This document shows, one piece after another, positions 1,412 to 51,353 of a stretch of DNA of 64,000 bases. Positions within the stretch are counted from its first letter, which is position 1. Every line of letters starts with the position of its first letter. The DNA lies in the IMG/VR virus record IMGVR_UViG_3300037010_001702, positions 124,001 through 188,000 of that record. The stretch is one strand, 5' to 3'. The position numbers were made by a program, and so were the translations under genes. Below the pieces are notes generated by a model. That model had not been told where the DNA came from, did not search any database, and was given only the letters and a program-made list of their open reading frames with translations.

Positions 1412-1779
1412 TTTGTAGGTACTTCAATATTGAGGACATCACGTACGTTGAACTCAACATACAAAAGATCGGCCATCGCTAGAATGGCATTGTTGTTTGG
1501 AAGGGAGAGCACTTGAAGTGAAATAACGCTAACACGTGGATCGTAGTTAAACACTTCTGTCAGATCTGTTTCAATAATCTGGCGCGTATTATCGTCATTT
1601 GGCTCAAACACCATCATTGGAATTCTTGTGCCATAGTTAGGCATCATGAGGCGCTGACCCTTAATCGTGTAGATATGGTTCAACAAGTCTTGCTTCACAA
1701 GCTCTATATCCTTCAAGCCGAACGTTCTGTTCGCCATCCAGTTTGCAGTAGAAAAGCCATTGTAGAGTGATGTTGCCAT
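1408..1779 (-). CDS. gp25: Baseplate wedge subunit gp25-like
   Basis: T.KGQRLMMPNYGT, FEP and YDPRV motifs; lies between gp5-like and gp6-like genes. Confidence 0.9.
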   Translation of the reverse strand: MATSLYNGFSTANWMANRTFGLKDIELVKQDLLNHIYTIKGQRLMMPNYGTRIPMMVFEPNDDNTRQIIETDLTEVFNYDPRVSVISLQVLSLPNNNAILAMADLLYVEFNVRDVLNIEVPTK

Positions 1780-1800
1780 GGTATGATCGGAGTAATGAAT

Positions 1801-1808
1801 TATTTATC
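1801..1808 (-). promoter_or_regulatory. Putative T4-type late promoter (GATAAATA)
   Basis: Near match to TATAAATA about 20 nt upstream of gp25. Confidence 0.55.
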
Positions 1809-1829
1809 AGAAAAATCGACTACCGTAAA

Positions 1830-3089
1830 TCACTCCTTCCAGTTAGCTCCGCGGGTACCAGAAGTTACTGGCCGCGTCCATGGCTCATGACCTGGGATTA
1901 CAGAAGGTGAGTCTGGAAGGTCTGGGCATGAAGCATCTGAAGCTACTGCAGCTGGAGGTCCGTTAAGCTGAATGCTTGCACCTGATTGCTTGATATCCCC
2001 GCCTGCGCTGATGTTTGTATCGCTTGAGCTAGAGATAATCATCGTAGCTTTTGCCTTTAGTTCCATGTTTGAAGCCGCTGTAACCTTGATGCTTGACTCA
2101 CTGTCAATATCAAACACCCCACAAGCTGACTGCTTGATGTCCTTGTTAGCCTTTAAGTGGAATGAACCGCTTATGCCAACCTTCATGTTACCAGTCAGAG
2201 CCTTTACATTAATGTTCTTACCTGCTTCCAGGTTGATGCTTCCATCAGCTGTAAGGTTGATGTCCTTTCCAGATCTAAGACTGATGGACTCAGCTCCGAA
2301 TACGTGAAAGTGACCATCCTCGTCAAGTTCCATCCATGCTTTGCCCCTAGCTGTAGAAACGTAGATGCGTTCATTCGTGTCGTCAAAGATAACCTGATGA
2401 CCTCTACCTGTCTTAAAGCGCATTCTAGAACCTTTAGGATCATCCTGCATGATGATGGCGTGTCTGCCTGGGGTTACAATGCAGTATGTCTGTGGATCAA
2501 GATAGCTGTCAACTGGGCTGTTTGCGTAGCCATCAGTGCCATCCTTGTTCGTTTTGTTCTGCGCTGCCTGACGTTCAACCCCACCACGTGTCTTAGCTTG
2601 AGAAGTGGTCATCTTACCGTCAAACTGTTCGCGAAGGTTGTTGTACTCTGGCTGAATTGGGATGGCTTGTCCAGCATCATCTTCTGAATCACCAAATGGT
2701 CCAGGATTACCAGCATCGTCTGCATTTCTACCAGCCGGTAGTGATCTATTGCGGTGAAGGCGAAGAGTTGACGCGAAGTAAAAGCGTACTGATGGATTCG
2801 CGTTTAAGCAGAACACAAGGACAGTAGCACCGATCTTTGGTATAGCCCACATGCCATATGCAACTTGAGATTGATTTGCTACTCCACTCGTAGGATACTC
2901 AACTGTAAATCCCGCGAATGGCGAAGCATACTCTGCCCAAGGGAGAGAATCAATGTCAAAATTTTCTCCATCAAGAGTAGGTACCCACAGCTTACACCGC
3001 CCCATTTGATCAGGGTCATCTGTTGCTACGACCTGTCCTTCCATAATGAAAGGAATGCCATCATCAATGAAGTCTAGTGGGCCGCTCAT
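1830..3089 (-). CDS. gp5: Baseplate central spike (gp5/VgrG-like, no lysozyme domain seen)
   Basis: N-terminal OB-fold motifs (GQVVATDDPDQMGRCKLWVP, LPWA, PKIGATVLV), beta-helix-like C-terminus, ends PGHEPW. Confidence 0.85.
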   Translation of the reverse strand: MSGPLDFIDDGIPFIMEGQVVATDDPDQMGRCKLWVPTLDGENFDIDSLPWAEYASPFAGFTVEYPTSGVANQSQVAYGMWAIPKIGATVLVFCLNANPSVRFYFASTLRLHRNRSLPAGRNADDAGNPGPFGDSEDDAGQAIPIQPEYNNLREQFDGKMTTSQAKTRGGVERQAAQNKTNKDGTDGYANSPVDSYLDPQTYCIVTPGRHAIIMQDDPKGSRMRFKTGRGHQVIFDDTNERIYVSTARGKAWMELDEDGHFHVFGAESISLRSGKDINLTADGSINLEAGKNINVKALTGNMKVGISGSFHLKANKDIKQSACGVFDIDSESSIKVTAASNMELKAKATMIISSSSDTNISAGGDIKQSGASIQLNGPPAAVASDASCPDLPDSPSVIPGHEPWTRPVTSGTRGANWKE

Positions 3090-5137
3090 GGTTGTTTCAT
3101 TCCTTGTCCGTAGGTTATCATGTGCATGACATGATAGAACTCCCCATTTGCAAAGTGAGTGTCAATGTCTGTAATTCTGTAGATGCCCTTGTAGAAGAAC
3201 TCATCAGCAAACATGCTAGCACCATCCTTAAAGTTACCGACGTAATCAACATTGGGAGCTCTGATGTTTATCTTAGCGTAGAGCCCAAGAACAGTTGAGT
3301 CAATGCCATTTAGAAGTGGGTCGTATTTTGTCCCATTGTAGTGCGGCTTCATCACAGCATCTAAATTCTGAATTCTCTTGTTAACAAAGGTATCAATATA
3401 GCGCTGCTTTGCCGAAGCAACACCATTCTTAATAGCTGTCTGGGTTGCACCAGTGTTGTTAACATCAACATTCTTCATCAACGAGGTAAGCTCAGTCGAG
3501 GAGATGATGGTTGTGTGAGGAGGCATTCCACCGGTCGTATTCGCATCAGCTAGCTTCATGATGATATTTGGGTTACCTCTAACTGTCATTGACAGCTTTA
3601 GCGTGCTCATGTAGTTAAGGTAGGCCACGGTTTGGTTGTATTCTTGCTTTGCGCCAAGAGCTTCCTGTGATGCTCTTGAATCAATATTTTCATCTCGATG
3701 ATCAGAGTTGTTGATGCGCTGGACCTTTGTCTTCATGCCCATGAAGATAGGATCATTAGCTTGAATATCCGTTCTATCAGTTTCAGTTGAGCTTGGTTTT
3801 TCATCTGTAGCTTGTGAATCACCCTTAATAGTAGAGACCTTCTGACCACTCGCTGCTATCTCAGCAAATCTATTTCTACCAATGTGCAGTTTTTTGTCAA
3901 GTGATACTGCCGCAACTCTTCCATCAAATTCAACTCTTAGGTCCTTGATGTGAGTGTTCTTGCCAGTGAATAGGTAGTCATACGTGATAAAGTTTACCTT
4001 GTTCTCAATGATGTTTTTTGGAGACGGCATCACATGAGGATAGACATCAAAGTGAATAGTATACGTACTGTTATCGGATGTAATGACGGGACTAATTCTG
4101 AACTGTACGCCCTCACCAGCTATTCTTTTAGCGGAGCTTGACTCCTTTAGGAACTCTGATGAAAGCTCAAGGATGCTTGAGATAGCCTTGTCAATTGTAG
4201 TGCTAGCTGAGAATGCTATCTCATAGTCATCAACTATCTTATTGACTGGCTTGTAGAAGCCACGTTTAGGAAATTTCTTCTCCGTATTTCTAGCAACTGA
4301 AGCAAGGTTAGGAAGCAGTGCTCTCCATTTTGGTGGTACGGTGATCATGTACTGCACCAGCTTGCCTGGCTTTATATTTGACACTGCACTATCAGAAACG
4401 CCATTGTACTTAAGGAAGTAGGTAAGCGATTGTTCATTTAGCTGAGCTTCAAGAGAGTCAATTAGACCACCAACTGTCTTATCACGACCCTTAGTAGTGG
4501 CTGAACGGATGTCACCCATATTGAGCTGCTGATCTGAGCTAAGACCATTACCAGCTGCAACACCCTCATGATTAATGAACGCAATGTCAAACACAGAACC
4601 GGAGCTCGTGAACTCAAATGACAGGTTTGAAATCAAAAATGGTATATTGCAGGTAACTACGTGCTCTACGTTACCATTGTAGTGATGCCCGGAGAACATT
4701 ACAGTAAGCAAGAAGAACGTTGAAGATGCCGATGCATGAAGCTTGTCGGAGAACAAGTCCATAAGGTAGTTGTAAAACGTTAACCCGGTTGAATCGTGAA
4801 TCTTCATCGATCCCTGCTTACACAGCAGCATTGGGTTCTTTGGTTCTCCAACACCAGGAAAGTGGTTGAACGTTAAGTCAGTTACAGAGTACTGGGAATA
4901 CCGTCTAGTGTCAAGGACCAAGTAGGCATCTGATCCATCAATGTTCAAGCGCTGCCCAAGCTCAACGTCATGCACTCTAGCTAAGAGTGGAGAAACATTG
5001 TTGTCATCCTTACCAATAAGAGAGCGCAGGGATTCAGTGCTTGAACCAGCTGTGATGATGAAGTGATATGAGTATGTTCTAAAGTTATCCAGTGGATTTG
5101 GATAACCTGCAGCATTTGGATCAGCAGTAACTGTCAT
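3086..5137 (-). CDS. Putative baseplate hub protein (gp27-like)
   Basis: NPLDNFRTYSYH N-terminus, MTVRGNP and FYKGIYRITDIDTHFANGEFY C-terminus; adjacent to gp5. Confidence 0.6.
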   Translation of the reverse strand: MTVTADPNAAGYPNPLDNFRTYSYHFIITAGSSTESLRSLIGKDDNNVSPLLARVHDVELGQRLNIDGSDAYLVLDTRRYSQYSVTDLTFNHFPGVGEPKNPMLLCKQGSMKIHDSTGLTFYNYLMDLFSDKLHASASSTFFLLTVMFSGHHYNGNVEHVVTCNIPFLISNLSFEFTSSGSVFDIAFINHEGVAAGNGLSSDQQLNMGDIRSATTKGRDKTVGGLIDSLEAQLNEQSLTYFLKYNGVSDSAVSNIKPGKLVQYMITVPPKWRALLPNLASVARNTEKKFPKRGFYKPVNKIVDDYEIAFSASTTIDKAISSILELSSEFLKESSSAKRIAGEGVQFRISPVITSDNSTYTIHFDVYPHVMPSPKNIIENKVNFITYDYLFTGKNTHIKDLRVEFDGRVAAVSLDKKLHIGRNRFAEIAASGQKVSTIKGDSQATDEKPSSTETDRTDIQANDPIFMGMKTKVQRINNSDHRDENIDSRASQEALGAKQEYNQTVAYLNYMSTLKLSMTVRGNPNIIMKLADANTTGGMPPHTTIISSTELTSLMKNVDVNNTGATQTAIKNGVASAKQRYIDTFVNKRIQNLDAVMKPHYNGTKYDPLLNGIDSTVLGLYAKINIRAPNVDYVGNFKDGASMFADEFFYKGIYRITDIDTHFANGEFYHVMHMITYGQGMKQP

Positions 5138-6652: not shown

Positions 6653-7360
6653 TTATTCCTTTATCGCTGCTTCGATCTTAGCAAAGAGCTTCTTAGCTAG
6701 GACTGGCTTGTCAGTAAGATCCACGATCTCCGCGAACTCCTTCTCGTATCCAAGTTCAACAGCTCTACGAGCTAGTGATCCTGAGACGATGTCAGTGCCA
6801 GCGTATCCATTGCTCTTGATCTGAGAAAGAGCTGAATCCAGGGCGGCAGCTTTGTCATCCTGTTTCGTAAGAGTAGCGTCCTCATCTCTCTCAAGGTGAA
6901 TCTTGTAGTGCTTGATTTGCTGATTGTCAGGTGTCTTAAAGTTCTTATCGAGAATCTTAATGTAGTCCTCAATGCGATCTGTTCCCGCTGCAACTGCGAT
7001 AGGTTCCATTCCTTTCTCACGACATTCTGCAAGGGCGGCAAAAGCATTTACAGCTGTCATAAATGTAACACCATTTGCTTTTCCTGAACCCTTCATGAAT
7101 GAAATTCTCTCATCAACTGAGAGAGGGTTTCTCTTCTTATCAAGATCTGACTTGCTTCCGCCAATCACAACAACCACAGGTGATACATTAAGCCCAATCT
7201 GTGGATTAGCCTTGATGAACTTTTTTACAAGGTTTATAACAGCGTAGTGGCCTTTCGTGGGAGGGTTAAATCGACCAATGATGACTGCAACCTTGTTGGT
7301 GCCCATTGGTGCCAAATCTTCAAAAAGCGTTTGAATTTCAAGTTGTTCGTTAATGTCCAT
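6653..7360 (-). CDS. Cytidylyltransferase-family (HIGH-like) nucleotidyltransferase
   Basis: IIGRFNPPTKGH, NPLSVDER, AGTDR and VSGSLAR motifs. Confidence 0.8.
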   Translation of the reverse strand: MDINEQLEIQTLFEDLAPMGTNKVAVIIGRFNPPTKGHYAVINLVKKFIKANPQIGLNVSPVVVVIGGSKSDLDKKRNPLSVDERISFMKGSGKANGVTFMTAVNAFAALAECREKGMEPIAVAAGTDRIEDYIKILDKNFKTPDNQQIKHYKIHLERDEDATLTKQDDKAAALDSALSQIKSNGYAGTDIVSGSLARRAVELGYEKEFAEIVDLTDKPVLAKKLFAKIEAAIKE

Positions 7361-7423: not shown

Positions 7424-7454
7424 GTTTACTAAATTACTAAGATTAGAGTATAAT
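7424..7454 (+). promoter_or_regulatory. Sigma70/T4 early-type promoter (GTTTACT...TATAAT)
   Basis: GTTTACT at 7424 and TATAAT at 7449, upstream of gp55. Confidence 0.6.
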
Positions 7455-7493: not shown

Positions 7494-8288
7494 TTGATTA
7501 CAAAAACAATAAAAGAGAAGAAGTCTAAGCAGAAGAGAGAAAAATCTACTTCTACGAAGGGACATTATGTCACCAATGCTGTACTACTCCCAGCCGTTAT
7601 CGAAGCCAAAGCGCAAAATCTGGTAACGAACAAGCTAATCCGTATGATTCAAATGATTGCCGAGCGGTATTCCCGTAAGGCAAACTTTATCGGGTACTCA
7701 TTCAGAGAAGATATGGTGTCTGCGGCTGTAATGAACCTGTGCAATAATGCACTTAAGTTCAATCCCGAAAAGTACAACAATCCTTTCTCTTACTACACCA
7801 CTGCCATTCACAACTCCTTCCTCCAGTACCTAGCTGATGAGAAGAAGCACCGAAATCTACGCGATGCCTTGTTGATTGATGCAGGTTCGAACCCAAGCTT
7901 CAACTTTATGGACGATGAGAAGGATGAATCGTTCTTTGAAGTCAAGGAATCCGATGAGTACTTTCTTCCAGAGCTGGATGAAGATGGGCTTGCCACGCTT
8001 GATTCAGAAACTGCAGCTGAACTTGTCGTGCCAGCAGTTGAATCTATCGGTGAAGCGGACGTTGAATTCATTCCGAAGACACTGAAAGAAGCGAAGTACC
8101 GCTATCAGCACAGAATTCCTGGACCTGTTACACGTTACGGTCCGAAAGACATTGAAATTGATGCAGATGGAAACATTACAATCAAACCCAAACCTGAACC
8201 AAAGCCAAGAAAACCACGAGCACAGAAAGAAGATGTAGCACCAGTAAAGGCTGCTAAAAGGACTGCCAAAGTTGCTAAGGGTAAATAA
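7494..8288 (+). CDS. gp55: Late-transcription sigma factor gp55
   Basis: HYVTN, NFIGYSFREDMV, KFNPEK..NPFSYYTT.IHNSFLQYL..EKK; GGAG RBS with TTG start. Confidence 0.9.
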   Translation: MITKTIKEKKSKQKREKSTSTKGHYVTNAVLLPAVIEAKAQNLVTNKLIRMIQMIAERYSRKANFIGYSFREDMVSAAVMNLCNNALKFNPEKYNNPFSYYTTAIHNSFLQYLADEKKHRNLRDALLIDAGSNPSFNFMDDEKDESFFEVKESDEYFLPELDEDGLATLDSETAAELVVPAVESIGEADVEFIPKTLKEAKYRYQHRIPGPVTRYGPKDIEIDADGNITIKPKPEPKPRKPRAQKEDVAPVKAAKRTAKVAKGK

Positions 8289-8346
8289 TGAATTATACGA
8301 AAATATATAATTCATTAGTTGATAGAGCCCTGCAAAAGGAGGTCAA

Positions 8347-9369
8347 ATGAAAATAGCATTAATGACTGATATTCATTGGGGTGCTAAAAATAATTCTATT
8401 CAGCACAATCTTGATTGTGCTGAATATATAGATTGGTTTATTAAAAATTTAATTGAAAATAATTGTAAGGCTATTTGTTTTCTTGGGGATTGGTTCGAAA
8501 ATCGGAATAGTGTTAATATCCAAACACTTAATAAATCCTTTGATTCATTAGCAAAATTAGATGAACTGAATATTCCAATATATTTTTGTGTTGGCAACCA
8601 CGATTTGTTTCACCGCGAAAATAGAAATCAGTTTTCTACGTATCATTATTCTAAGTTTAAAAATATCATCTTGGTTAATGAACCTATGCAAGTTGGTAAG
8701 ATGATGTTTTTCCCATATTTGTTCAAGGACGAATATGCTAACGCTGCTAGTTTGATAGAGAAAGAAAAGCCAGATTATGTATTTGGACATTTTGAATTTA
8801 GAAATTTTGTGGTGACTGGAACTGATAGGAGAATGGACCATGGACCAGACCATTCGCTCTTTAAAATACCTAAATATCTTTTTTCTGGGCATTATCACAA
8901 ACGCCAAATGCAAGATAATGTCATTTACATCGGCAATACGTTTCCTACTAATTATGGTGATGTGTGGGATGATGCGCGAGGCATGTGTATTCTGGATGCA
9001 CAAGATGACGACGTTTCATTTATTGATTGGGGTGATTGCCCCAAGTATCGAAAGGTTAAATTGTCTGATGTGTTGAATGGTCAGCTAGATTTTCCTGCTA
9101 AGTGTCGTGTTCGTTGTTTGATTGACATCGACGTTGGTTATTCAGAAGCGCAAACACTACGAGAAGAAATGATTAAGACATTAGGACTTCGTGAATTCTC
9201 TTTAGAAGAAAACTCTGCTGAACGTAAGGAAGCAATTGCTGGTGAAGAGATGGAAGACTTTGATATGGGATCATTGAATGATGCTGTTATCAGAATGCTT
9301 CAAACAGGTATCTCCGGCACTACTACGATTAATGCTAGCAAACTTATTGAAATTTATGGCCAGCTTTAA
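8347..9369 (+). CDS. gp47: Recombination endonuclease subunit gp47 (SbcD/Mre11-like)
   Basis: Metallophosphoesterase motifs TDIHWG, LGDWF, VGNHD, GHFE, SGHYH. Confidence 0.93.
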   Translation: MKIALMTDIHWGAKNNSIQHNLDCAEYIDWFIKNLIENNCKAICFLGDWFENRNSVNIQTLNKSFDSLAKLDELNIPIYFCVGNHDLFHRENRNQFSTYHYSKFKNIILVNEPMQVGKMMFFPYLFKDEYANAASLIEKEKPDYVFGHFEFRNFVVTGTDRRMDHGPDHSLFKIPKYLFSGHYHKRQMQDNVIYIGNTFPTNYGDVWDDARGMCILDAQDDDVSFIDWGDCPKYRKVKLSDVLNGQLDFPAKCRVRCLIDIDVGYSEAQTLREEMIKTLGLREFSLEENSAERKEAIAGEEMEDFDMGSLNDAVIRMLQTGISGTTTINASKLIEIYGQL

Positions 9370-9757
9370 AGAACAATTTGATTCCGATATTACATGCTCG
9401 GACATAGAAGCGATTCATCAAGCACTACGAGTGTGTTGCTTCTATCCACACCAGAATGTTGCTTTTATAGTTCCTAAATTTTCTTTTGCTGCCCAAATAT
9501 CAAACAATATTTGGGCAGCGCATGCTACTGTTCCGGTGTGGATGGCATTTGCAAAATTAATTAGAAAAACTCGCATGATCACAGAGTTTGATAATGGAAG
9601 TAGGATACAATTCATTTATACTTCTAACCATCTAAAGGGTAGAGCACTTAGCTATGTGTTCATACATCGTTTAGTAGAGATGAATGAGGATATGGTAGGC
9701 GCTTTACTCCCGTCAATTTATCACAATAAGACACGTTCTATAGAATATTTTAAATGA
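9356..9757 (+). CDS. Degenerate terminase-ATPase-like protein
   Basis: Aligns by eye to the TerL ATPase in this window (EFDNGSRI shared); lacks Walker A; Walker B is altered. Confidence 0.6.
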   Translation: MASFKEQFDSDITCSDIEAIHQALRVCCFYPHQNVAFIVPKFSFAAQISNNIWAAHATVPVWMAFAKLIRKTRMITEFDNGSRIQFIYTSNHLKGRALSYVFIHRLVEMNEDMVGALLPSIYHNKTRSIEYFK

Positions 9758-11514
9758 GCACACCTTTTAAATTTAAATCTTTGTCTTTGCGAAATTTTTT
9801 ATCGTTTGGCAACGTGGCTATTGAAATTGATCTTTCTGATACCACGAGCACCCTTGTTCAGGGAGATAATGCAGATACTGGTGGAGCGAATGGATGCGGA
9901 AAAACAACTATTCTAAATGCAATCTGTTATGCTCTCTATAACAAACCATTCGATAACATCTCTCTGCAAAAGCTGATTAACACTACCAACAGTTCAAAGA
10001 ACACTTTGATGGAAGTTAGATTGACCTTTGAAAAGGGCAAAGATGTGTTTGAAATCCTCCGGCAACGTGGTGAAACTTTCAACATCAATATATCAATGAA
10101 TGGTGAAGATGTAACACTTGATAGTGTTACAGAGAATGATAGGTTCATATGCGAGATAGTTGGTATGAGCTACGAACTATTCACTAAGGTTGTTATCTTC
10201 TCTGGAAGTTCGACTCCATTCCTGCAAATGCCTGTCTCACAACAGCGTGCGCAAATTGAAGAGCTCTTCAACATCACCATGCTTACGGAGAAGGCGATTA
10301 AGCTAAAGGAAATCATCAAGACAACTGAAGGTAGCATTGCAATTCAAGAAGCTATCATCAAGGAACAAGAAGGCCAAGTAGCTCTCTACAATCGACAGCT
10401 AAAAGATGCGGCTGCTCGTGTATTTCGGTGGGATGAAGATCGTGAAAAGCAAGTTAACATTCTGCGCAGTGAACTTCATCGGGTGCAGCAAGTTAATATG
10501 GCTGAGGAAAAGGAACTCCACGCTCTGGTAGCTGACTTAGCAAAGCAAGAACGTGAGATAAATGCTCAGCTTCAAGTTCTTAGAACTGAAAAACTTGCAA
10601 TGTCAAATGATGCGAAGAAGCTTGATGGCGAATTAAAGCATCTGACAGAAGCTAAGTGTCCTTACTGTTTGCAAGCGTATGCAGGTGCTGCAGATAAGCT
10701 GGTAGAAAAGCAGAAGTTATTCGAGCGTAAGAAGAGCCAGCTTGCTGATCTTACTGCTAAGATTGATAACAAGACTACAGAATCTATCGAGCTAGAAGAT
10801 CAGCAGGCTGCAGCTAAAGAGGTTATGCAGTTTTCTAGCTTAGAAGCAGCAATCAAAGCAGAAAATTCTGCTCTCACCGCGCAGTCTAAGATCGATGATC
10901 TCGTTGCGTCTGCAAACCCTCACATTGAAGCTCATGAACAGCTGAAGTCGCAAGCAGTCAAGACTGTTTCGTACTCTGACTTGGATAACATTCGAAAGGA
11001 ATTAGAGCACCAGCAATTCTTGCTGAAGCTTCTTACAGATAAGAACTCGTTCATTCGTCGTAAGATTATCAGCAAGACAATTCCTTTCTTGAACAAGCAG
11101 CTTATGCTCTATACAAAAGAGACAGGTCTTCCTCACGTTGTAAAGTTTGATGATGACATGAGCTGCACAGTTTCTGAATATGGGCGTGAACTAGATTTCG
11201 GTAATCTATCTGGTGGTGAAAAGAAGCGAGTCAACCTTTCCCTATCATTAGCATTCAGAGATGTGCTTCATCACCTTCACTCATGGGTAAATTGTTTATT
11301 CATAGACGAGATTGATGCTTCATTAGACGGGTCTGGTGTTGAAAGTATTTTTAAACTACTAAAGACTAAAGCTAGAGATGAACATCTCGGGCTTTGGATT
11401 ATCTCTCACCGCCCAGAAGCAGTAGGAAGATTTGATAGAACGGTTATTGTTCGTAAAGAGAATGGCTTCTCTAGAATTCTAGATGAGAGTGGTTCTGAGT
11501 TAGGAGTAACATGA
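9754..11514 (+). CDS. gp46: Recombination endonuclease ATPase subunit gp46 (SbcC/Rad50-like)
   Basis: RNFLSFGN, Walker A GANGCGKTT, CPYC zinc hook, LSGGEKKR signature, FIDE, ISH. Confidence 0.95.
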   Translation: MSTPFKFKSLSLRNFLSFGNVAIEIDLSDTTSTLVQGDNADTGGANGCGKTTILNAICYALYNKPFDNISLQKLINTTNSSKNTLMEVRLTFEKGKDVFEILRQRGETFNINISMNGEDVTLDSVTENDRFICEIVGMSYELFTKVVIFSGSSTPFLQMPVSQQRAQIEELFNITMLTEKAIKLKEIIKTTEGSIAIQEAIIKEQEGQVALYNRQLKDAAARVFRWDEDREKQVNILRSELHRVQQVNMAEEKELHALVADLAKQEREINAQLQVLRTEKLAMSNDAKKLDGELKHLTEAKCPYCLQAYAGAADKLVEKQKLFERKKSQLADLTAKIDNKTTESIELEDQQAAAKEVMQFSSLEAAIKAENSALTAQSKIDDLVASANPHIEAHEQLKSQAVKTVSYSDLDNIRKELEHQQFLLKLLTDKNSFIRRKIISKTIPFLNKQLMLYTKETGLPHVVKFDDDMSCTVSEYGRELDFGNLSGGEKKRVNLSLSLAFRDVLHHLHSWVNCLFIDEIDASLDGSGVESIFKLLKTKARDEHLGLWIISHRPEAVGRFDRTVIVRKENGFSRILDESGSELGVT

Positions 11515-11661
11515 TAAGTAGAGTTCCAATGACACCAGGACAGCTGAATGACGCGATTTGGTTTCTGCCAACATGACAGTAAATGGACTGTAAGACTTGA
11601 TATGTGGTGGTTTGGCTACAGACTAACGTAGTCATCCTGTGCCCTTTTATTTCCCTATGCC

Positions 11662-11669
11662 TATAAATA
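11662..11669 (+). promoter_or_regulatory. T4 late promoter TATAAATA
   Basis: Exact consensus immediately upstream of the GIY-YIG gene. Confidence 0.7.
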
Positions 11670-11673
11670 CAGG

Positions 11674-12396
11674 ATGGGTGGAATATATTTTATTTTTTGC
11701 AAAACAAACAACAAGACTTATATTGGTTCAGCAAAGAACCTTCATACTCGGTGGGATGAGCATAGAGGAATGCTTATTAAGCAAACTCACTTTAACAGAA
11801 ATTTGCAAAGTGCATGGAACAAATACGGTGCGGAACAATTTGAATATTCTATTAAAGAAGAGCTGGGCGAGTATGACAAGAAATATTTCTTTCTTAGAGA
11901 GAATTATTGGATTGATTTGTATAGAGAAAGTAAAATACCGATTTTTAACATTGCTAGAGCTGAAGGTGGATGGGGCCCTGAAACATTCTTAAGAAAGAAT
12001 GAAATAGGGGCCAAGATTTCTACTTCACTTAAGGAGCATGCCAAATCCCTTACTCAAGAAGAGCGAAATGCTCTTTATGGTAAAGGGAAAAAGGGTATTG
12101 CACTTAGTGAAGAGCACAAAAGAAAAACATCTGAAGGTCTAAGGGGAATAAAGAAATCCGAAGAAACTAAAAAACGGATGTCCTTAGCTCAGCAAAATAC
12201 AAATCCTATGAGAGCAGAAAACATGGCTCACATAGGAAAACAAAATATCGGAAGAACTCCCATTAATGCAATACCAATAATTATAGATGGGGTTGAATAC
12301 AAATCCTGTCAACTAGCATCTATCGTTTTGGGAATTCCTTATAGGCAGGTAACTAAAATGAGAAAGGCTCAAAATGACAGTCGAAAAGACGGATAA
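11674..12396 (+). mobile_element. Free-standing GIY-YIG homing endonuclease with NUMOD3-like repeats (intact)
   Basis: GGIYFIFC..NKTYIGSA, RW.EH, LQSAWNKYG, RENYW, FNI; SEEHKRK and SEETKKRMS repeats. Confidence 0.9.
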
Positions 12397-12925
12397 GAAA
12401 AAGAGATTTAATTCCAAGGGGAAAGGCAATGGATTTGAATTAACAGTAGCAAAGAAATTATCAACTGCGCTTGCGCCTCTTACCTTTATACGCGCGCCCC
12501 AGAGCGGGGCGCGCGTAGGTGGTAAGAACTTCGAAATCTTTGGTAAGATGTTCGGTGAAGATGCTATGAAGCTTTTCGTGGGTGATGTTGTTCCTACAAA
12601 TGAAAAAGATACTCAAACAGTATTCCATTGGTCTATTGAATGCAAATCTTATGCTAAGTCAGATAGCTTTGAAACAATGGTTGCAGGCAACTCAAACATC
12701 TTCAAATGGTTTGAAGAATCAGTTATCGATGCTGCTAAGACTAACAAGAAACCTATCCTGGTGTTTAAATGGAACCATACACCTGTCTATGTTGCTGTTA
12801 GTGGTGAAGACAGCAGGCCCGAAAGAGAACGTATGACAATATCACAAGGTGCTCGGTCATTAGACATATTTTATCTTGATGATCTTTTGCAGGTCCCAAG
12901 CTTCTGGTATGGGAGCAGTGTATAA
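12374..12925 (+). CDS. PD-(D/E)XK nuclease, Holliday junction resolvase-like
   Basis: SKGKGNGFE..VAK, R.P.SGA, GD, IECK motifs. Confidence 0.75.
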   Translation: MTVEKTDKKKRFNSKGKGNGFELTVAKKLSTALAPLTFIRAPQSGARVGGKNFEIFGKMFGEDAMKLFVGDVVPTNEKDTQTVFHWSIECKSYAKSDSFETMVAGNSNIFKWFEESVIDAAKTNKKPILVFKWNHTPVYVAVSGEDSRPERERMTISQGARSLDIFYLDDLLQVPSFWYGSSV

Positions 12926-48507: not shown

Positions 48508-48814
48508 ATATTATCATCCAGAGAATTTCTTGCAGAAGCTGTCATTAGTAAGATGCCGGACTTTGAGGTGGTGAATGTGAAGAAAGCTATTAAAGCTTTC
48601 TTCATAAAAACTACGGAGCGCACCCACGGTGGTGGGTGCTTACAGTCCTGAAAAGACTGGTTTTAAGGTTCTCACCACTAAAACGCTCCATACCGTCTCA
48701 GAAACAACTGAAGTTTGGGTTGGTGGTAAAGTAGTTTTTATCAGACCTGACCTACTGCAAGAAGTAAAGGAAGCTCTTAACGAGCACCGATTGCCTTCCT
48801 GTCACTATAAATAA
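48508..48814 (+). pseudogene. Remnant of an ART-like paralogue
   Basis: ILSSREFLAEAVISK (eroded MLSFREFLAE) plus frameshifted YSPEKTGFKVLT..TEVWVGGKVVFI, resembling the C-terminus of 41879. Confidence 0.6.
48806..48813 (+). promoter_or_regulatory. T4 late promoter TATAAATA
   Basis: Exact consensus upstream of terL. Confidence 0.7.
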
Positions 48815-48868: not shown

Positions 48869-49753
48869 ATGGCAGGAAATGAGCTCATTAAACGAGCATA
48901 TACGGAATCGGAATATACCCCCGAGCTTATTCAAGAGCTCGTAAGGTGTCAAAAGGACCCCGTCTACTTTATTAGAAAGTACGTCTGGCTCCAGCACCCA
49001 AAGCGCGGTAAAATTCTATTTGACTTGTATCCCTATCAAGAGGAGCTTATTCACGCGTGTGAGAACAATACCCGTGTTATCGCTCTTATCTCCCGTCAGA
49101 TGGGTAAGACGCAGACCATCTCCATGTACCTTTTGTGGTATGCGATGTTCCACCGAGATCAAACGATTGTCATCGCTTCTAAGAACAATAGCCACGCTAT
49201 GGAAATTATGGATCGTATCCGCTTCGCGTACGAAGAACTTCCGCACTGGCTAAAGGCAGGTTGTAAGTACTATAACAAGCACAACATTGAATTCGACAAT
49301 GGTTCCCGCATTAAGTCTGAAGCTACTACCGAAAAGACTGGTCGGGGATTGGCAATTTCAAAGCTTTACCTTGACGAATTGGCCTTCATCTCACCACGCG
49401 TTCAAACTGAAATGTGGCGCTCACTATCGCCAACTCTTTCAACTGGTGGTTCTGCTATCATCTCATCTACTCCTAATGGTGATACTGACCTGTTTGCTAC
49501 TCTTTGGCGTGGTGCTAAATCAGGTGAGAACAACTTCAAGCCAGTGTTCTTCCCGTGGCACCTTCACCCTGATCGCAAGGAAGAGTACATTAAGCAGATG
49601 CAGGGCGAACTTGGTCCTGTAGGTTTCCGACAGGAAGTTCTGTGTTGCTCAAGTTGGGCCTCTATAAATACTTCTATTGGTAAAACCACTTTAGAAGAAC
49701 TTTATGAATGCCTATTAGAAGGGCAAGAGCAGGTGTATCACATCAATGTTTGA
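48869..49753 (+). CDS. gp17: Terminase large subunit, N-terminal part plus 36-aa split IntN
   Basis: DPVYF, YPYQ, Walker A SRQMGKT, LYLDE, SSTPNG; then FRQEVL|CCSSWASINTSIGKTTLEELY (IntN starts at 49643). Confidence 0.93.
   Translation: MAGNELIKRAYTESEYTPELIQELVRCQKDPVYFIRKYVWLQHPKRGKILFDLYPYQEELIHACENNTRVIALISRQMGKTQTISMYLLWYAMFHRDQTIVIASKNNSHAMEIMDRIRFAYEELPHWLKAGCKYYNKHNIEFDNGSRIKSEATTEKTGRGLAISKLYLDELAFISPRVQTEMWRSLSPTLSTGGSAIISSTPNGDTDLFATLWRGAKSGENNFKPVFFPWHLHPDRKEEYIKQMQGELGPVGFRQEVLCCSSWASINTSIGKTTLEELYECLLEGQEQVYHINV
49663..49670 (+). promoter_or_regulatory. Late promoter TATAAATA inside IntN coding sequence
   Basis: Exact consensus overlapping codons S-I-N-T. Confidence 0.6.
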
Positions 49754-50238
49754 CACGAAGGATTACAACCTGACGACTGGGGGGCATTTCAAGCATGTGG
49801 TGACCCCAGGGCGCACCTCTTCCGCACTACGGAAAACTGGACTGCTTCTTCTGATAAGTATAGAAAACATTCGAAGAACATCCGAATGTTCTTGCAGCAA
49901 GAACTAAGATAATTCACGAAGCTAACTTAAAAGCAGGTGAGGATGGTTAACGGTTACAAGCGCACTGCAAAAGGACGAAATCTATGTTCTGACGCGTGTT
50001 GAAAACAAAAAGATTATAGAGTTCTATGGTAACTATTGGTATGCTTGCCTAAAAAGTACAGACCTGATGAAGTGGTAGGTTGTAAAGGCCAAACATCACG
50101 GCAAATCTGTGACGCGGATGCCACCAAGATCAAGTTGGCAGAAGATGCATGGTATCAAGTTAAGATAGTATAAGAACCGGAATACAAGAAAAACCTAAGA
50201 AGGTGGTAGATGAATGCATAGCATGGCTCAAACAATAA
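49700..50238 (+). pseudogene. Decayed Vsr-like homing endonuclease between the terL halves
   Basis: Fragments ENKKIIEFYGNYWYA / KKYRPDE..TSRQICDADATKIKLAEDAWYQVKIV*EPEYKKN / KVVDECIAWLKQ*, broken by stops and frameshifts; start approximate. Confidence 0.7.
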
Positions 50239-51353
50239 AGAACACAAAGGGCGTTAAAGTTCAAACTCCAACTGGGATGAAGAATTTTAGCGGTATGTCT
50301 AAAAGCTGGCATGAGCAAGTTGTTGAAATAGTATCAGCAACAAGAAAAATAACGTGCGGGATGAAGCATAAATTTCTTGTTGAGCCAGGTTGGGTTGATG
50401 CTGAGCACATTGAGCCGGGTATGTCATTTACGACAATTGATGGCAAGGATGATCCTATCCTTAGTGTTCAGGTTAAAAATGATCCACAGTGGTTGTATGA
50501 TCTACTTGATGTTGAGGGTGGTAGTGCCTACATAACAGAGGGGGTCATATCGCACAACTGTGAATTTATTTCATCAGACGCGCTGTTGATGGACTCACTT
50601 AAACTGTCCTACATTAAGGCCACACCTCCGGTTACCCAGAACATGGGCTTTAACTTCTGGCGAGAGTCAATAGGTGGGCGAGGTAAGACGTACTTAGTAG
50701 GTGTAGACCCGGCTACTGGTAACAGTAAGGACTTTACTGTCATTGAAGTTATCGAGTACCCGTCAATGGAGCAGGTGGCAGAATTCAGAAGCAACACCGT
50801 TCACATTCCACTGATCTATGCTAAGCTCAAGTGGTTGTTTAAGTTCCTTCATCAACCTGATCCAAACAGGGGTAGAGCTGAAATTATCTGGTCATTTGAG
50901 CGCAACGGTGTTGGTGAAGCTCTTGTTGCAATGATTCAAAATGACGACTCTATGGATGGTGGTATCTACCTTGACGGTGTTGAACTGTACAATGAGAGCT
51001 CAACCAGTCAGCGCCTTGGTTGCTACACTACTGGTAAGTCAAAGCTTCTTGCCTGTATGCAGCTTAAGAACCTTTTGGAAAAGGGAGATGGTATCAAGAT
51101 CAACTCAGAACACTTGCTATACGAGCTTCAGAACTTCGTGGCAGTTAATGGCACCTACCAAGCTAAGCAGGGTTGTACTGATGACACGATCATGGCAATG
51201 GCGGTTGTTATGAAGGTTCTCGGCAGACTCGCATCATACGATGACAAGGCAAGAAAGCTTGTGTATGAGTCAGTTGACCCGGACTCTGACAAGCTTCCGG
51301 AGGAAAACCCAGATCAATTTGGAGATGACTACGTTCCGTTTGCAATAGTCTGA
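50223..51353 (+). CDS. gp17: Split IntC (about 112 aa) plus terminase large subunit C-terminal nuclease part
   Basis: KVQTPTG.KNF.G, TCGMKHKF, LYDLLDV..YITEGVISHN|CEF; then YLVGVDPA.G..KDFT, ERNGVG, DD.IMA. Alternative start at 50214. Confidence 0.93.
   Translation: MAQTIKNTKGVKVQTPTGMKNFSGMSKSWHEQVVEIVSATRKITCGMKHKFLVEPGWVDAEHIEPGMSFTTIDGKDDPILSVQVKNDPQWLYDLLDVEGGSAYITEGVISHNCEFISSDALLMDSLKLSYIKATPPVTQNMGFNFWRESIGGRGKTYLVGVDPATGNSKDFTVIEVIEYPSMEQVAEFRSNTVHIPLIYAKLKWLFKFLHQPDPNRGRAEIIWSFERNGVGEALVAMIQNDDSMDGGIYLDGVELYNESSTSQRLGCYTTGKSKLLACMQLKNLLEKGDGIKINSEHLLYELQNFVAVNGTYQAKQGCTDDTIMAMAVVMKVLGRLASYDDKARKLVYESVDPDSDKLPEENPDQFGDDYVPFAIV

What the first reader, a model, noticed from the sequence alone, without database searches (positions are those of the whole stretch)
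9356..9757. Degenerate terminase-ATPase paralogue between gp47 and gp46
Seen: the 133-aa ORF (CCFYPHQNVAFIV..AAQISNNIWAAHATVPVWM..TEFDNGSRIQF..LKGRALSYVFIHRL..ALLPSI) is collinear with this phage's own TerL (AMFHRDQTIVIAS..AMEIMDRIRFAYEELPHWL..IEFDNGSRIKS..GRGLAISKLYLDEL..SLSPTL). Walker A is absent and Walker B DE has become HR. It is an open, coupled gene in an operon with an early-type promoter. Inference: because terminase ATPase domains are recognised by Avs/STAND defence sensors, this could be a decoy or anti-defence protein, or a link between packaging and recombination.
Basis: partly seen in the sequence, partly recalled or inferred. Interest (0 to 1): 0.7.

Follow-up and report, generated by a model that had tools for sequence, protein, structure and literature searches.

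The report
Dead mini-terminase ATPase protein family
A small phage gene between the two recombination-nuclease genes encodes a shortened, catalytically dead copy of the packaging motor's ATPase core; it belongs to a previously undescribed, fast-evolving but selected family in giant T4-like phages, and its function is still unknown.

Summary
ORF 9356..9757 (+, 133 aa) is homologous to the TerL ATPase core. Support: BLASTP against the phage's own TerL (E 1e-6), PHROG 5989, a family profile against T4 gp17 structures (E 1e-11, gp17 residues 165-283), hhalign (98.4%), and an AlphaFold model (pLDDT 89) whose best PDB match is gp17 (TM 0.73).

It begins just after the P-loop and ends before the C-motif. 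The Walker B acids are replaced (HR here) and vary across the family.

It is not a one-off. About 20 relatives of 99-164 aa exist in metagenomic T4-like jumbo phages. Frames are intact, four motifs are conserved, and dN/dS is 0.18-0.34 where it can be measured. These proteins evolve far faster than TerL, gp46 or gp47.

Most members end in an ATGA overlap with gp46. However, the gp47-gp46 junction is a hypervariable slot that holds unrelated ORFs with the same overlap. Close relatives lack the gene, and one subgroup sits beside NAD-salvage genes instead. A dedicated gp46/47 role is therefore weakly supported, and the complex prediction gave no answer.

My best guess (0.35) is a non-catalytic TerL mimic made before TerL, acting in phage-host or phage-phage conflict. 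The decoy idea is untested, and the ATP site read by Avs2 and Avs3 is missing.

The parts
9356..9757 (+). 133-aa ORF (P0001). It is a truncated, catalytically dead homologue of the TerL ATPase core, equivalent to T4 gp17 residues about 165-283.
9356..9369 (+). 14-nt overlap of the ORF start with the end of gp47. The ATG is embedded in the conserved gp47 C-terminal codons.
   Evidence: The same 14-nt overlap is seen in the homologues P0003 and P0009.
9584..9607 (+). Motif EFDNGSRI (E77-I84), shared almost letter for letter with the own TerL (IEFDNGSRI at 49286) and with T4 gp17 (ELDNGSSI). G81 is invariant in the family.
9635..9640 (+). K94-G95, the (K/R)-G just before the Walker B strand. G95 is invariant, and the basic residue is kept in 10 of 13 aligned members. 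This is the position of the RG of TerL, where the P74-26 trans-arginine finger R139 lies (between alpha2 and beta3).
   Evidence: for the alignment. PMC5727402 for the position of R139 and the equivalent arginine in T4. The equivalence to K94 is my inference from the alignments.
9665..9670 (+). H104-R105, in place of the TerL Walker B Asp-Glu. This position varies in the family (H, D, S, Y, W) and is not conserved as an acid.
9754..9757 (+). ATGA stop-start overlap with gp46, the arrangement expected for translational coupling.
   Evidence: The same overlap occurs in L009, L013, L014, L015, L023, L029 and L037. It also occurs for unrelated ORFs in the same slot.
8347..9369 (+). gp47, the Mre11/SbcD-like nuclease subunit (upstream neighbour).
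   Evidence: PHROG 100, 3.8e-61. Metallophos on the identical gene in L001.
9754..11514 (+). gp46, the Rad50/SbcC-like ATPase subunit (downstream neighbour).
   Evidence: PHROG 77, 1.5e-93. SMC_N and AAA_23.
7494..8288 (+). First gene of the same-strand cluster. It is gp55-like by position, with only a weak Sigma70_r2 match. The best sigma-70-like promoter site lies upstream at 7425..7454.
   Evidence: E 0.0023, below the Pfam cut-off. (promoter count equals chance).
48869..49753 (+). The phage's own TerL, first ORF: the ATPase part with intact Walker A (SRQMGKT) and Walker B (YLDE), followed by a short N-intein. This is the comparator for the finding. A T4-type late promoter motif, TATAAATA, lies at 48806..48813.
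   Evidence: (Terminase_6N 4.7e-14).
50214..51353 (+). The phage's own TerL, second ORF: a 115-aa C-intein followed by the rest of TerL, including the nuclease domain.
   Evidence: Intein_splicing at residues 81-115; Terminase_6C, weak..

Best explanation
**What it is (shown).** The ORF is a real, selected gene. It encodes a compact alpha/beta domain that descends from the ASCE ATPase core of a T4-type large terminase. It has lost the first strand, the P-loop, the Walker B acids, the C-motif, subdomain II and the nuclease domain. It therefore cannot bind or hydrolyse ATP the way TerL does, and must act by binding something.

It belongs to an uncharacterised family of 99-164-aa proteins in a clade of roughly 310-370-kb T4-like jumbo phages from sediments and microbial mats. 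The family keeps the fold-defining TerL motifs: VPxW, (E/F)DNGSRI, (K/R)G and LLP(C/S). It evolves far faster than TerL, gp46 or gp47, it is present only patchily, and it sits in accessory gene slots.

**How it most likely works (inferred).** It is an accessory protein made with the DNA-metabolism genes, probably before the late-expressed TerL. It presents a TerL-like surface without activity, acting as a molecular mimic in a conflict. The most plausible roles are interfering with a host factor that recognises the terminase ATPase fold (an anti-defence role) or with a competitor's packaging machinery. A role as a fixed subunit of the phage's own conserved machines is less likely.

**Confidence.** About 0.95 for the identity part. 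About 0.35 for the conflict-mimic mechanism, which is the figure given.
For: **Homology and fold.**, and the structure part.

**Loss of catalytic motifs.**

**It is a real gene.**
- Intact frames in about 20 homologues at 22-40% identity.
- dN/dS 0.18-0.34 in three unsaturated pairs, similar to a neighbouring gene at 0.13.
- Chance of a stop-free frame about 8e-5.

**Fast evolution against conserved neighbours.**
- Window against L009/L021: gp46 86% identity, gp47 71%, this ORF 28%.
- In the tree, TerL terminal branches are 0.02-0.22 and small-protein branches are 0.39-2.25.

**Accessory and patchy.**
- Present in 6 of 42 IMG/VR loci that show both gp47 and gp46.
- 10 loci have a direct gp47-gp46 junction, including L025, the relative with the most similar gp47.
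- The slot holds unrelated ORF families elsewhere.
- One subgroup lies about 1.5 kb downstream of NAMPT and NMNAT-Nudix genes. From my own knowledge, that gene pair is a known phage NAD-reconstitution counter-defence.

**Timing.** T4-type late promoter motifs (TATAAATA) precede TerL and other structural genes, but none precedes the 7494..11514 cluster.

**Precedent.** Terminase ATPase domains are direct targets of Avs1-3 and Upx, and T4 vs.8, a stand-alone TerL-ATPase-like protein, is recognised by EcAvs2 (PMC13601566).
Against: - No experiment or prediction links the protein to any partner.
- Avs2 and Avs3 read the ATP-bound active site of TerL (Avs3 also reads the nuclease domain), and this protein lacks both.
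- Upx is modelled to thread strands beta1, beta4, beta5 and beta6, of which at least beta1 is missing here.
- A mimic could trigger a sensor rather than block it.
- Net charge is unremarkable (pI 5.8-9.1), so there is no obvious DNA-mimic or DNA-binding signature.
- Fast evolution could also reflect weak constraint.
- The early/middle timing is inferred only from the absence of a late-promoter motif and by analogy with T4. No RNA run was listed.
- The hosts and their defence repertoires are unknown.
Confidence: 0.35

Rival explanations
1. It is a modulator of the phage's own packaging motor. As a pseudo-subunit, it docks on the ATP-site face of a TerL ATPase domain using the retained (K/R)G 'finger' side. 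It would either cap or poison ring assembly, keeping terminase silent until proheads are ready, or act as a stator. The analogy is the inactive delta-prime subunit of the clamp loader, which donates an arginine finger.
For: - The fold and the inter-subunit-face motifs of TerL are retained. The basic residue before the invariant G95 is kept in 10 of 13 members. It lies at the position of the P74-26 trans finger R139 and of the T4 arginine (PMC5727402).
- Related phages carry 238-246-aa ATPase-only TerL paralogues directly upstream of TerL. This suggests that extra TerL-like subunits are used by this clade.
- The tree places these paralogues between the TerLs and the small proteins.
Against: - The TerL ATPase core in the clade is very conserved (terminal branches 0.02-0.22), while the small proteins diverge at 0.39-2.25. 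That is not expected for a tight partner of TerL.
- The gene is absent from complete genomes of the clade: G001 and G002 show only TerL.
- It is not encoded near TerL and is not behind a late-promoter motif.
- The finger residue is not invariant.
Confidence: 0.2
2. It is an accessory factor of the gp46/gp47 (Rad50/Mre11-like) nuclease, made in a fixed ratio with gp46 by translational coupling.
For: - Most members end in an ATGA overlap with gp46: the window, L009, L013, L014, L015/16, L023, L029, L037, and P0009.
- In L015, three other ORFs lie between gp47 and the member, yet the member stays adjacent to gp46.
Against: - The slot is hypervariable, and unrelated ORF families show the same overlap with gp46.
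- 10 of 42 loci join gp47 directly to gp46.
- The subgroup P0015 and P0017-19 lies beside redoxin and NAD-salvage genes, not gp46.
- All gp46-linked members come from one clade, so the synteny may simply be inherited.
- gp46 and gp47 are far more conserved than this protein.
- The complex prediction gave no answer, which counts neither for nor against.
Confidence: 0.1
3. It is an expressed but functionally idle remnant of a partial TerL duplication. It persists because it sits in a translationally coupled operon, and its frame is kept partly by constraints from the overlapping gp47 end and the gp46 start.
For: - Very fast divergence and patchy presence.
- Catalytic residues are lost.
- The conserved residues are almost all those that TerL needs for its fold.
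- The conserved C-terminal '..YF' could partly reflect the gp46 initiation region.
Against: - Frames of similar length are kept across about 20 lineages at 22-40% identity, although a random frame here would close with p about 8e-5.
- dN/dS is 0.18-0.34 in the measurable pairs, including members that are not coupled to gp46.
- The AF2 fold is confident (pLDDT 89).
- The ESM Atlas lists look-alike clusters of 62-115 viral members. This is a lead only.
Confidence: 0.1

Closest known systems
ATPase domain of the T4-type large terminase (T4 gp17 N-subdomain I; Pfam Terminase_6N; PHROG 5989)
   Same: Homologous sequence and fold over gp17 residues about 165-283. It shares the motifs LPxW/F, DNGS-I, RG/KG and a conserved proline.
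   Different: It lacks the N-terminal region, the first strand with the Walker A P-loop, the Walker B acids, the C-motif, subdomain II and the nuclease domain. It is 133 aa against more than 500 aa. It has no Pfam hit. It is encoded among DNA-metabolism genes rather than in the late packaging module, and it evolves many times faster.
T4 vs.8, a stand-alone TerL-ATPase-like protein reported to be recognised by EcAvs2 (PMC13601566)
   Same: A small protein encoded outside the packaging module of a T4-like phage that resembles the terminase ATPase domain.
   Different: vs.8 (219 aa) keeps Walker A and Walker B; this family has neither. There is no significant sequence relationship (hhalign E 0.08, BLASTP E 11). 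The function of vs.8 is also unknown.
ATPase-only TerL paralogues (238-246 aa) directly upstream of TerL in related jumbo phages (L019 P0016; G004 L066). I know of no published description.
   Same: Same clade of phages. These are the best-scoring relatives of the small-protein profile (83 and 53 bits). They share the family-like 'LLxxxxPC' and 'LPEW/F' variants, and they lie between the TerLs and the small proteins in the tree.
   Different: They keep the N-terminal region and a P-loop (intact in L066, degenerate in P0016). They are twice as long and sit next to TerL, not next to gp46.
Inactive subunits of ring ATPases that work by contributing a surface, such as the clamp-loader delta-prime subunit (analogy from general knowledge)
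   Same: An ATPase-fold protein without nucleotide binding that may keep the trans-acting basic residue.
   Different: There is no evidence here of assembly with active subunits. This is an analogy only.

Membership tests
Large terminase ATPase (T4 gp17 type, Terminase_6N) | Homologous ASCE core fold and sequence | tested here: met
   Family profile against gp17 PDB chains, E about 1e-11. hhalign against the own TerL, 98.4%. Foldseek top hits are all TerL ATPase domains, TMq 0.73.
Large terminase ATPase (T4 gp17 type, Terminase_6N) | Walker A P-loop (SRQxGK[ST]) and the strand before it | tested here: not met
   The protein starts at the position of gp17 G165-K166. No P-loop is present in any of the 13 aligned members.
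Large terminase ATPase (T4 gp17 type, Terminase_6N) | Walker B Asp and catalytic Glu (hhhhDE) | tested here: not met
   FIHRL here against YLDEL in the own TerL and YIDE in gp17. The position varies across the family.
Large terminase ATPase (T4 gp17 type, Terminase_6N) | C-motif (TTT/SST), subdomain II and the C-terminal RNase H-like nuclease domain | tested here: not met
   The protein ends at the strand that precedes the C-motif. It is 133 aa in total and has no Terminase_6C.
Large terminase ATPase (T4 gp17 type, Terminase_6N) | Reaches the Pfam gathering score | tested here: not met
   No Pfam family matched even at E up to 1.
Decoy or inhibitor of terminase-sensing immunity (Avs1-3, Upx) | Presents the features those sensors read: the ATP-bound Walker site (Avs2, Avs3), the nuclease domain (Avs3), and strands beta1/4/5/6 (Upx model) | tested here: not met
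   The P-loop, the ATP site and the nuclease domain are absent, and at least beta1 is missing. The sensor requirements are taken from PMC13601566.
Decoy or inhibitor of terminase-sensing immunity (Avs1-3, Upx) | Binds a sensor and changes the outcome of defence | not testable with these tools
Subunit of the gp46/gp47 (Rad50/Mre11-like) complex | Obligate co-occurrence and adjacency with gp46/gp47 | tested here: not met
   Present in 6 of 42 loci. Ten loci have a direct gp47-gp46 junction. One subgroup lies in another context.
Subunit of the gp46/gp47 (Rad50/Mre11-like) complex | Physical interaction | tested here: inconclusive
   Complex prediction with gp47, the two gp46 head pieces and this protein scored 0.00, with the verdict 'no answer'.
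T4 vs.8-like proteins | Sequence similarity to vs.8 and retained Walker A/B | tested here: not met
   hhalign E 0.08, BLASTP E 11. The Walker motifs are absent.

The most novel reading that the evidence does not exclude
The family is a natural mimic of the terminase ATPase fold. Jumbo phages would make it before their real terminase appears, so as to blind or jam host sensors that detect TerL. Such sensors include the Avs family, Upx-like sensors and others not yet known. Sensors that recognise the fold or partly unfolded strands, rather than the ATP site, are the likeliest targets. If so, this would be the first counter-defence aimed at terminase sensing, built from the sensed protein itself.
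Probability: 0.2. Interest if true: 0.85.

Novelty: new variant of a known kind. Interest (0 to 1): 0.55.

Why it matters
The large terminase is one of the most conserved phage proteins, and recent work shows that it is a main target of bacterial pattern-recognition immunity (Avs1-3, Upx).

A selected, fast-evolving, catalytically dead mini-copy of its ATPase core, carried in accessory slots of giant phages, is a concrete candidate for one of two things. It could be a counter-measure to that immunity, or a regulator or competitor-poison of the packaging motor.

Whichever is true, it defines an unannotated protein family with no Pfam model. It also shows a reduction series in one phage clade: TerL, then an ATPase-only paralogue, then a P-loop-less mini-domain. 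This makes the question directly testable with simple co-expression assays.

Tried and rejected
- **Isolate phages.** A DNA search of 8300..11600 against isolate phages in 'distant' mode found no match. tblastn of the protein found only weak hits to true TerL genes (E 0.3 or higher) and no small homologue.
- **Word-index protein search.** With the single protein it found only itself. The exhaustive phmmer search was needed to find the family.
- **Polymorphism.** Every contig carrying the identical protein is 100% identical in DNA to the window, so no population-level dN/dS could be calculated.
- **dN/dS within the gp46-linked subgroup.** It is saturated (dS above 1.6 or undefined), so only the redoxin-linked subgroup gave usable values.
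- **Complex prediction.** The job used this protein with gp47 and the gp46 N- and C-terminal head pieces, using my own alignments A1-A4. It scored 0.00 and the verdict was 'no answer'. This is evidence neither for nor against binding.
- **Scan of viral contigs with the family alignment.** It failed because no stretch was conserved enough.
- **T4 vs.8 as a family member.** Rejected.
- **The 123-aa ORF upstream of the member in L037 as a tandem copy.** Rejected (hhalign E 0.48).
- **Charge as a clue to DNA mimicry or DNA binding.** pI is 5.8-9.1, which is not informative.
- **Sigma-70-type promoter scan.** The number of sites equals chance.
- **RNA evidence.** No RNA run was listed. The DNA runs that hold the locus are sediment and microbial-mat metagenomes.
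- **Zn or metal site.** I considered that the recurrent His at the Walker B position and in 'HLKG' might form one. I could not test this because the model coordinates are not readable in the script box.
Full report
**Setting.** The window is bases 124001-188000 of a 239-kb IMG/VR virus record. The record encodes a T4-type portal, the gp23 major capsid protein, a tail sheath and baseplate parts, so it is a T4-like myovirus. Complete relatives with terminal repeats are 343-368 kb. The DNA is found in sediment and microbial-mat metagenomes.

The gene cluster 7494..11514 (+) contains four genes:
- a gp55-like gene, assigned by position, with only a weak Sigma70_r2 hit;
- gp47 at 8347..9369 (SbcD/Mre11-like, PHROG 100, 3.8e-61);
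- the ORF in question at 9356..9757;
- gp46 at 9754..11514 (SbcC/Rad50-like, PHROG 77, 1.5e-93).

The ORF is open and 133 aa long. It overlaps gp47 by 14 nt and gp46 by the 4 nt of ATGA. A random frame of this composition would stay open with p about 8e-5.

It aligns collinearly with the phage's own TerL, whose first ORF is 48869..49753. The evidence is as follows:
- BLASTP gives 28% identity over 99 aa, E 1e-6, and includes the shared EFDNGSRI motif.
- PHROG 5989 'terminase large subunit' matches at 1.5e-7. Pfam finds nothing.
- A profile of 13 family members hits the T4 gp17 chains 2o0h, 3cpe and 3ezk at about 1e-11, covering gp17 residues 165-283.
- The same profile hits the own TerL by hhalign at 98.4%.
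- An AlphaFold2 model built on that alignment is confident (pLDDT 89, pTM 0.83).
- The model's best PDB matches are T4 gp17 (E 2.6e-6, TMq 0.73, rmsd 2.7), followed by the P74-26, D6E and Sf6 terminase ATPase domains.
- BFVD and the ESM Atlas structure search give the same answer.

The protein begins at the last residues of the gp17 P-loop and ends at the strand before the C-motif. It therefore lacks beta1, Walker A, the C-motif, subdomain II and the nuclease domain. TerL's YLDEL aligns with FIHRL.

**It is a family, and it is a real gene.**

An exhaustive phmmer search found about a dozen proteins of 99-136 aa. A profile search added three more. Related loci added members of 133-164 aa in L023, L029 and L037.

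Identities to the window protein are 22-40%. All frames are intact and of similar length. P60, G81 and G95 are invariant, and W62, I84, P119 and F132 are nearly so.

The Walker B position is H, D, S, Y or W, so it is not maintained as an acid. The basic residue before G95 is kept in 10 of 13 members. That site corresponds to the RG of TerL, where the P74-26 trans-arginine finger R139 lies and where T4 also has an arginine (PMC5727402). The equivalence is my inference from the alignments.

All contigs carrying the identical protein are identical in DNA to the window, so no polymorphism test was possible. In a subgroup with closer members (P0017, P0018, P0019), Nei-Gojobori dN/dS is 0.18-0.34, against 0.13 for a neighbouring gene. 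Comparisons within the gp46-linked subgroup are saturated.

**Rate and origin.**

Between the window and L009/L021, gp46 is 86% identical and gp47 is 71% identical, but the small protein is only 28% identical.

In a maximum-likelihood tree of the shared region:
- The clade's TerLs form a tight group, with terminal branches of 0.02-0.22.
- The small proteins have terminal branches of 0.39-2.25.
- The small proteins fall on one side of a branch (support 96/89).
- Two 238-246-aa ATPase-only TerL paralogues lie between the small proteins and the TerLs.

Those paralogues sit directly upstream of TerL in L019 and in the complete genome G004. One has intact Walker motifs and the other has degenerate ones. 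The small-protein profile scores one of them (83 bits) above every true TerL (38-62 bits). A 154-aa intermediate occurs elsewhere in genome G003.

This looks like a reduction series within the clade: TerL, then an ATPase-only paralogue, then a P-loop-less mini-domain. The window protein is not specially close to this genome's own TerL in single-sequence score. The window's own genome has only the ORF and TerL.

**Context.**

Most members end in an ATGA overlap with gp46. In L015, three other ORFs separate the member from gp47, yet it still abuts gp46.

Several observations weaken a dedicated link to gp46:
- Across the 42 IMG/VR loci that show both genes, the gp47-gp46 spacing ranges from 0 to 1548 nt.
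- Only 6 of those loci carry the family.
- 10 loci join the two genes directly. These include L025, whose gp47 is the most similar to the window's (80% identity; gp46 76%).
- The slot elsewhere holds unrelated recurrent ORF families that show the same ATGA overlap.
- The subgroup P0015 and P0017-19 lies after a redoxin gene. In L072 it is about 1.5 kb downstream of NAMPT and NMNAT-Nudix genes, not near gp46.

So the coupling to gp46 is a property of the slot, and the synteny may simply be inherited. A complex prediction with gp47, the two gp46 head pieces and this protein gave 'no answer', which is evidence neither way.

**Timing.**

The T4-type late promoter motif TATAAATA is enriched in the window, with 8 copies against 2.5 expected. 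Copies lie just upstream of TerL (48806) and of other genes. None precedes the 7494..11514 cluster.

No RNA run was listed.

**Mechanism.**

What is shown is a folded, selected, non-catalytic TerL-core domain. Without a P-loop it must act by binding. Three features argue against a fixed partnership with the very conserved TerL, gp46 or gp47, and fit a role in conflict:
- It evolves much faster than those proteins.
- Its presence is patchy.
- It sits in accessory slots, once beside NAD-salvage genes. From my own knowledge, that gene pair is a known counter-defence.

Terminase ATPase domains are direct targets of Avs1-3 and Upx. T4 vs.8, a stand-alone TerL-ATPase-like protein that keeps its Walker motifs, is recognised by EcAvs2 (PMC13601566). 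vs.8 is not detectably related to this family.

Against a simple decoy:
- Avs2 and Avs3 read the ATP-bound active site, and Avs3 also reads the nuclease domain.
- Upx is modelled to thread strands that include beta1.
- All of these features are missing here.

I therefore put about 0.35 on 'non-catalytic TerL mimic acting in phage-host or phage-phage conflict'. I put 0.2 on a modulator of the phage's own motor, which is supported by the retained K/R-G and by the ATPase-only paralogues next to TerL in relatives. I put 0.1 on a gp46/47 accessory factor and 0.1 on an idle remnant. The remainder is unassigned.

**Novelty.**

No Pfam model matches the protein, and no source gives it a name other than 'hypothetical protein'. 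I found no paper describing P-loop-less TerL mini-domains. The nearest published item is T4 vs.8.

I rate it a new variant of a known kind: terminase ATPase paralogues, or pseudo-enzymes. It is a good, cheap experimental lead rather than an established system.

Noticed in passing
window 48869..49753 and 50214..51353 (+), with the gap 49754..50213: The phage's TerL is encoded as two ORFs that are split inside an intein. The first ORF ends with an N-intein of about 36 aa after '...FRQEVL'. The second ORF starts with a 115-aa C-intein that ends '...VISHN', followed by 'CEFISSD...' (Pfam Intein_splicing 2.4e-5). The fragment sizes match the atypical naturally split GOS-TerL intein (IntN 37, IntC 115; PMC11766414). 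A TATAAATA motif at 49663 lies upstream of the second half.
   Followed up: partly
L066:1336-2052 (-) with TerL downstream (G004); L019:840-1580 (+) with TerL at 1577-3127: Related jumbo phages carry a 238-246-aa ATPase-only TerL paralogue immediately upstream of, and overlapping, the true TerL gene. Walker A and B are intact in L066. In L019 they are degenerate (PRQIGGTS; ILDQP).
   Followed up: partly
L070:1492-1956 (-) (genome G003): A 154-aa TerL-like ORF keeps the TerL N-terminal helix motif but has lost the P-loop region. It lies next to an NAD-dependent epimerase-like gene, far from gp46 and TerL. It looks like an intermediate in the reduction series.
   Followed up: partly
gp47-gp46 junction in L024, L033, L034, L038-L044, L047, L048, L050, L059, L061, L062: The junction is a hypervariable slot of 0-1548 nt holding other recurrent small ORF families. 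Examples are proteins of about 110-120 aa beginning 'MSTYTPDSW' with 'WYGGY...WKLSSG', and 76-77-aa proteins. Many of them also end in an ATGA overlap with gp46.
   Followed up: partly
L027, L028 and L063 at 4001-4264; L051 at 797-1066: The gp46 (Rad50-like) homologues in these loci are interrupted right after the P-loop lysine ('...NGAGK|C...', '...NGSGK|C...'). This is consistent with an intein. In L051 there is a large ORF inside the interruption.
   Followed up: no
L072:1-2466 (+): In the phage lineage that carries the redoxin-linked subgroup, the small TerL-like gene lies about 1.5 kb downstream of a NMNAT-Nudix gene and a NAMPT gene. From my own knowledge, this pair is a phage NAD-reconstitution counter-defence pathway. 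The window itself has a cytidylyltransferase-like (NMNAT-like) gene at 6653..7360 (-).
   Followed up: no
window 11662..11669 and 11674..12396 (+): A GIY-YIG homing-endonuclease-like gene directly follows gp46. A T4-type late promoter motif lies 5 nt upstream of its start. A PDDEXK_15 nuclease gene follows at 12374..12925.
   Followed up: no
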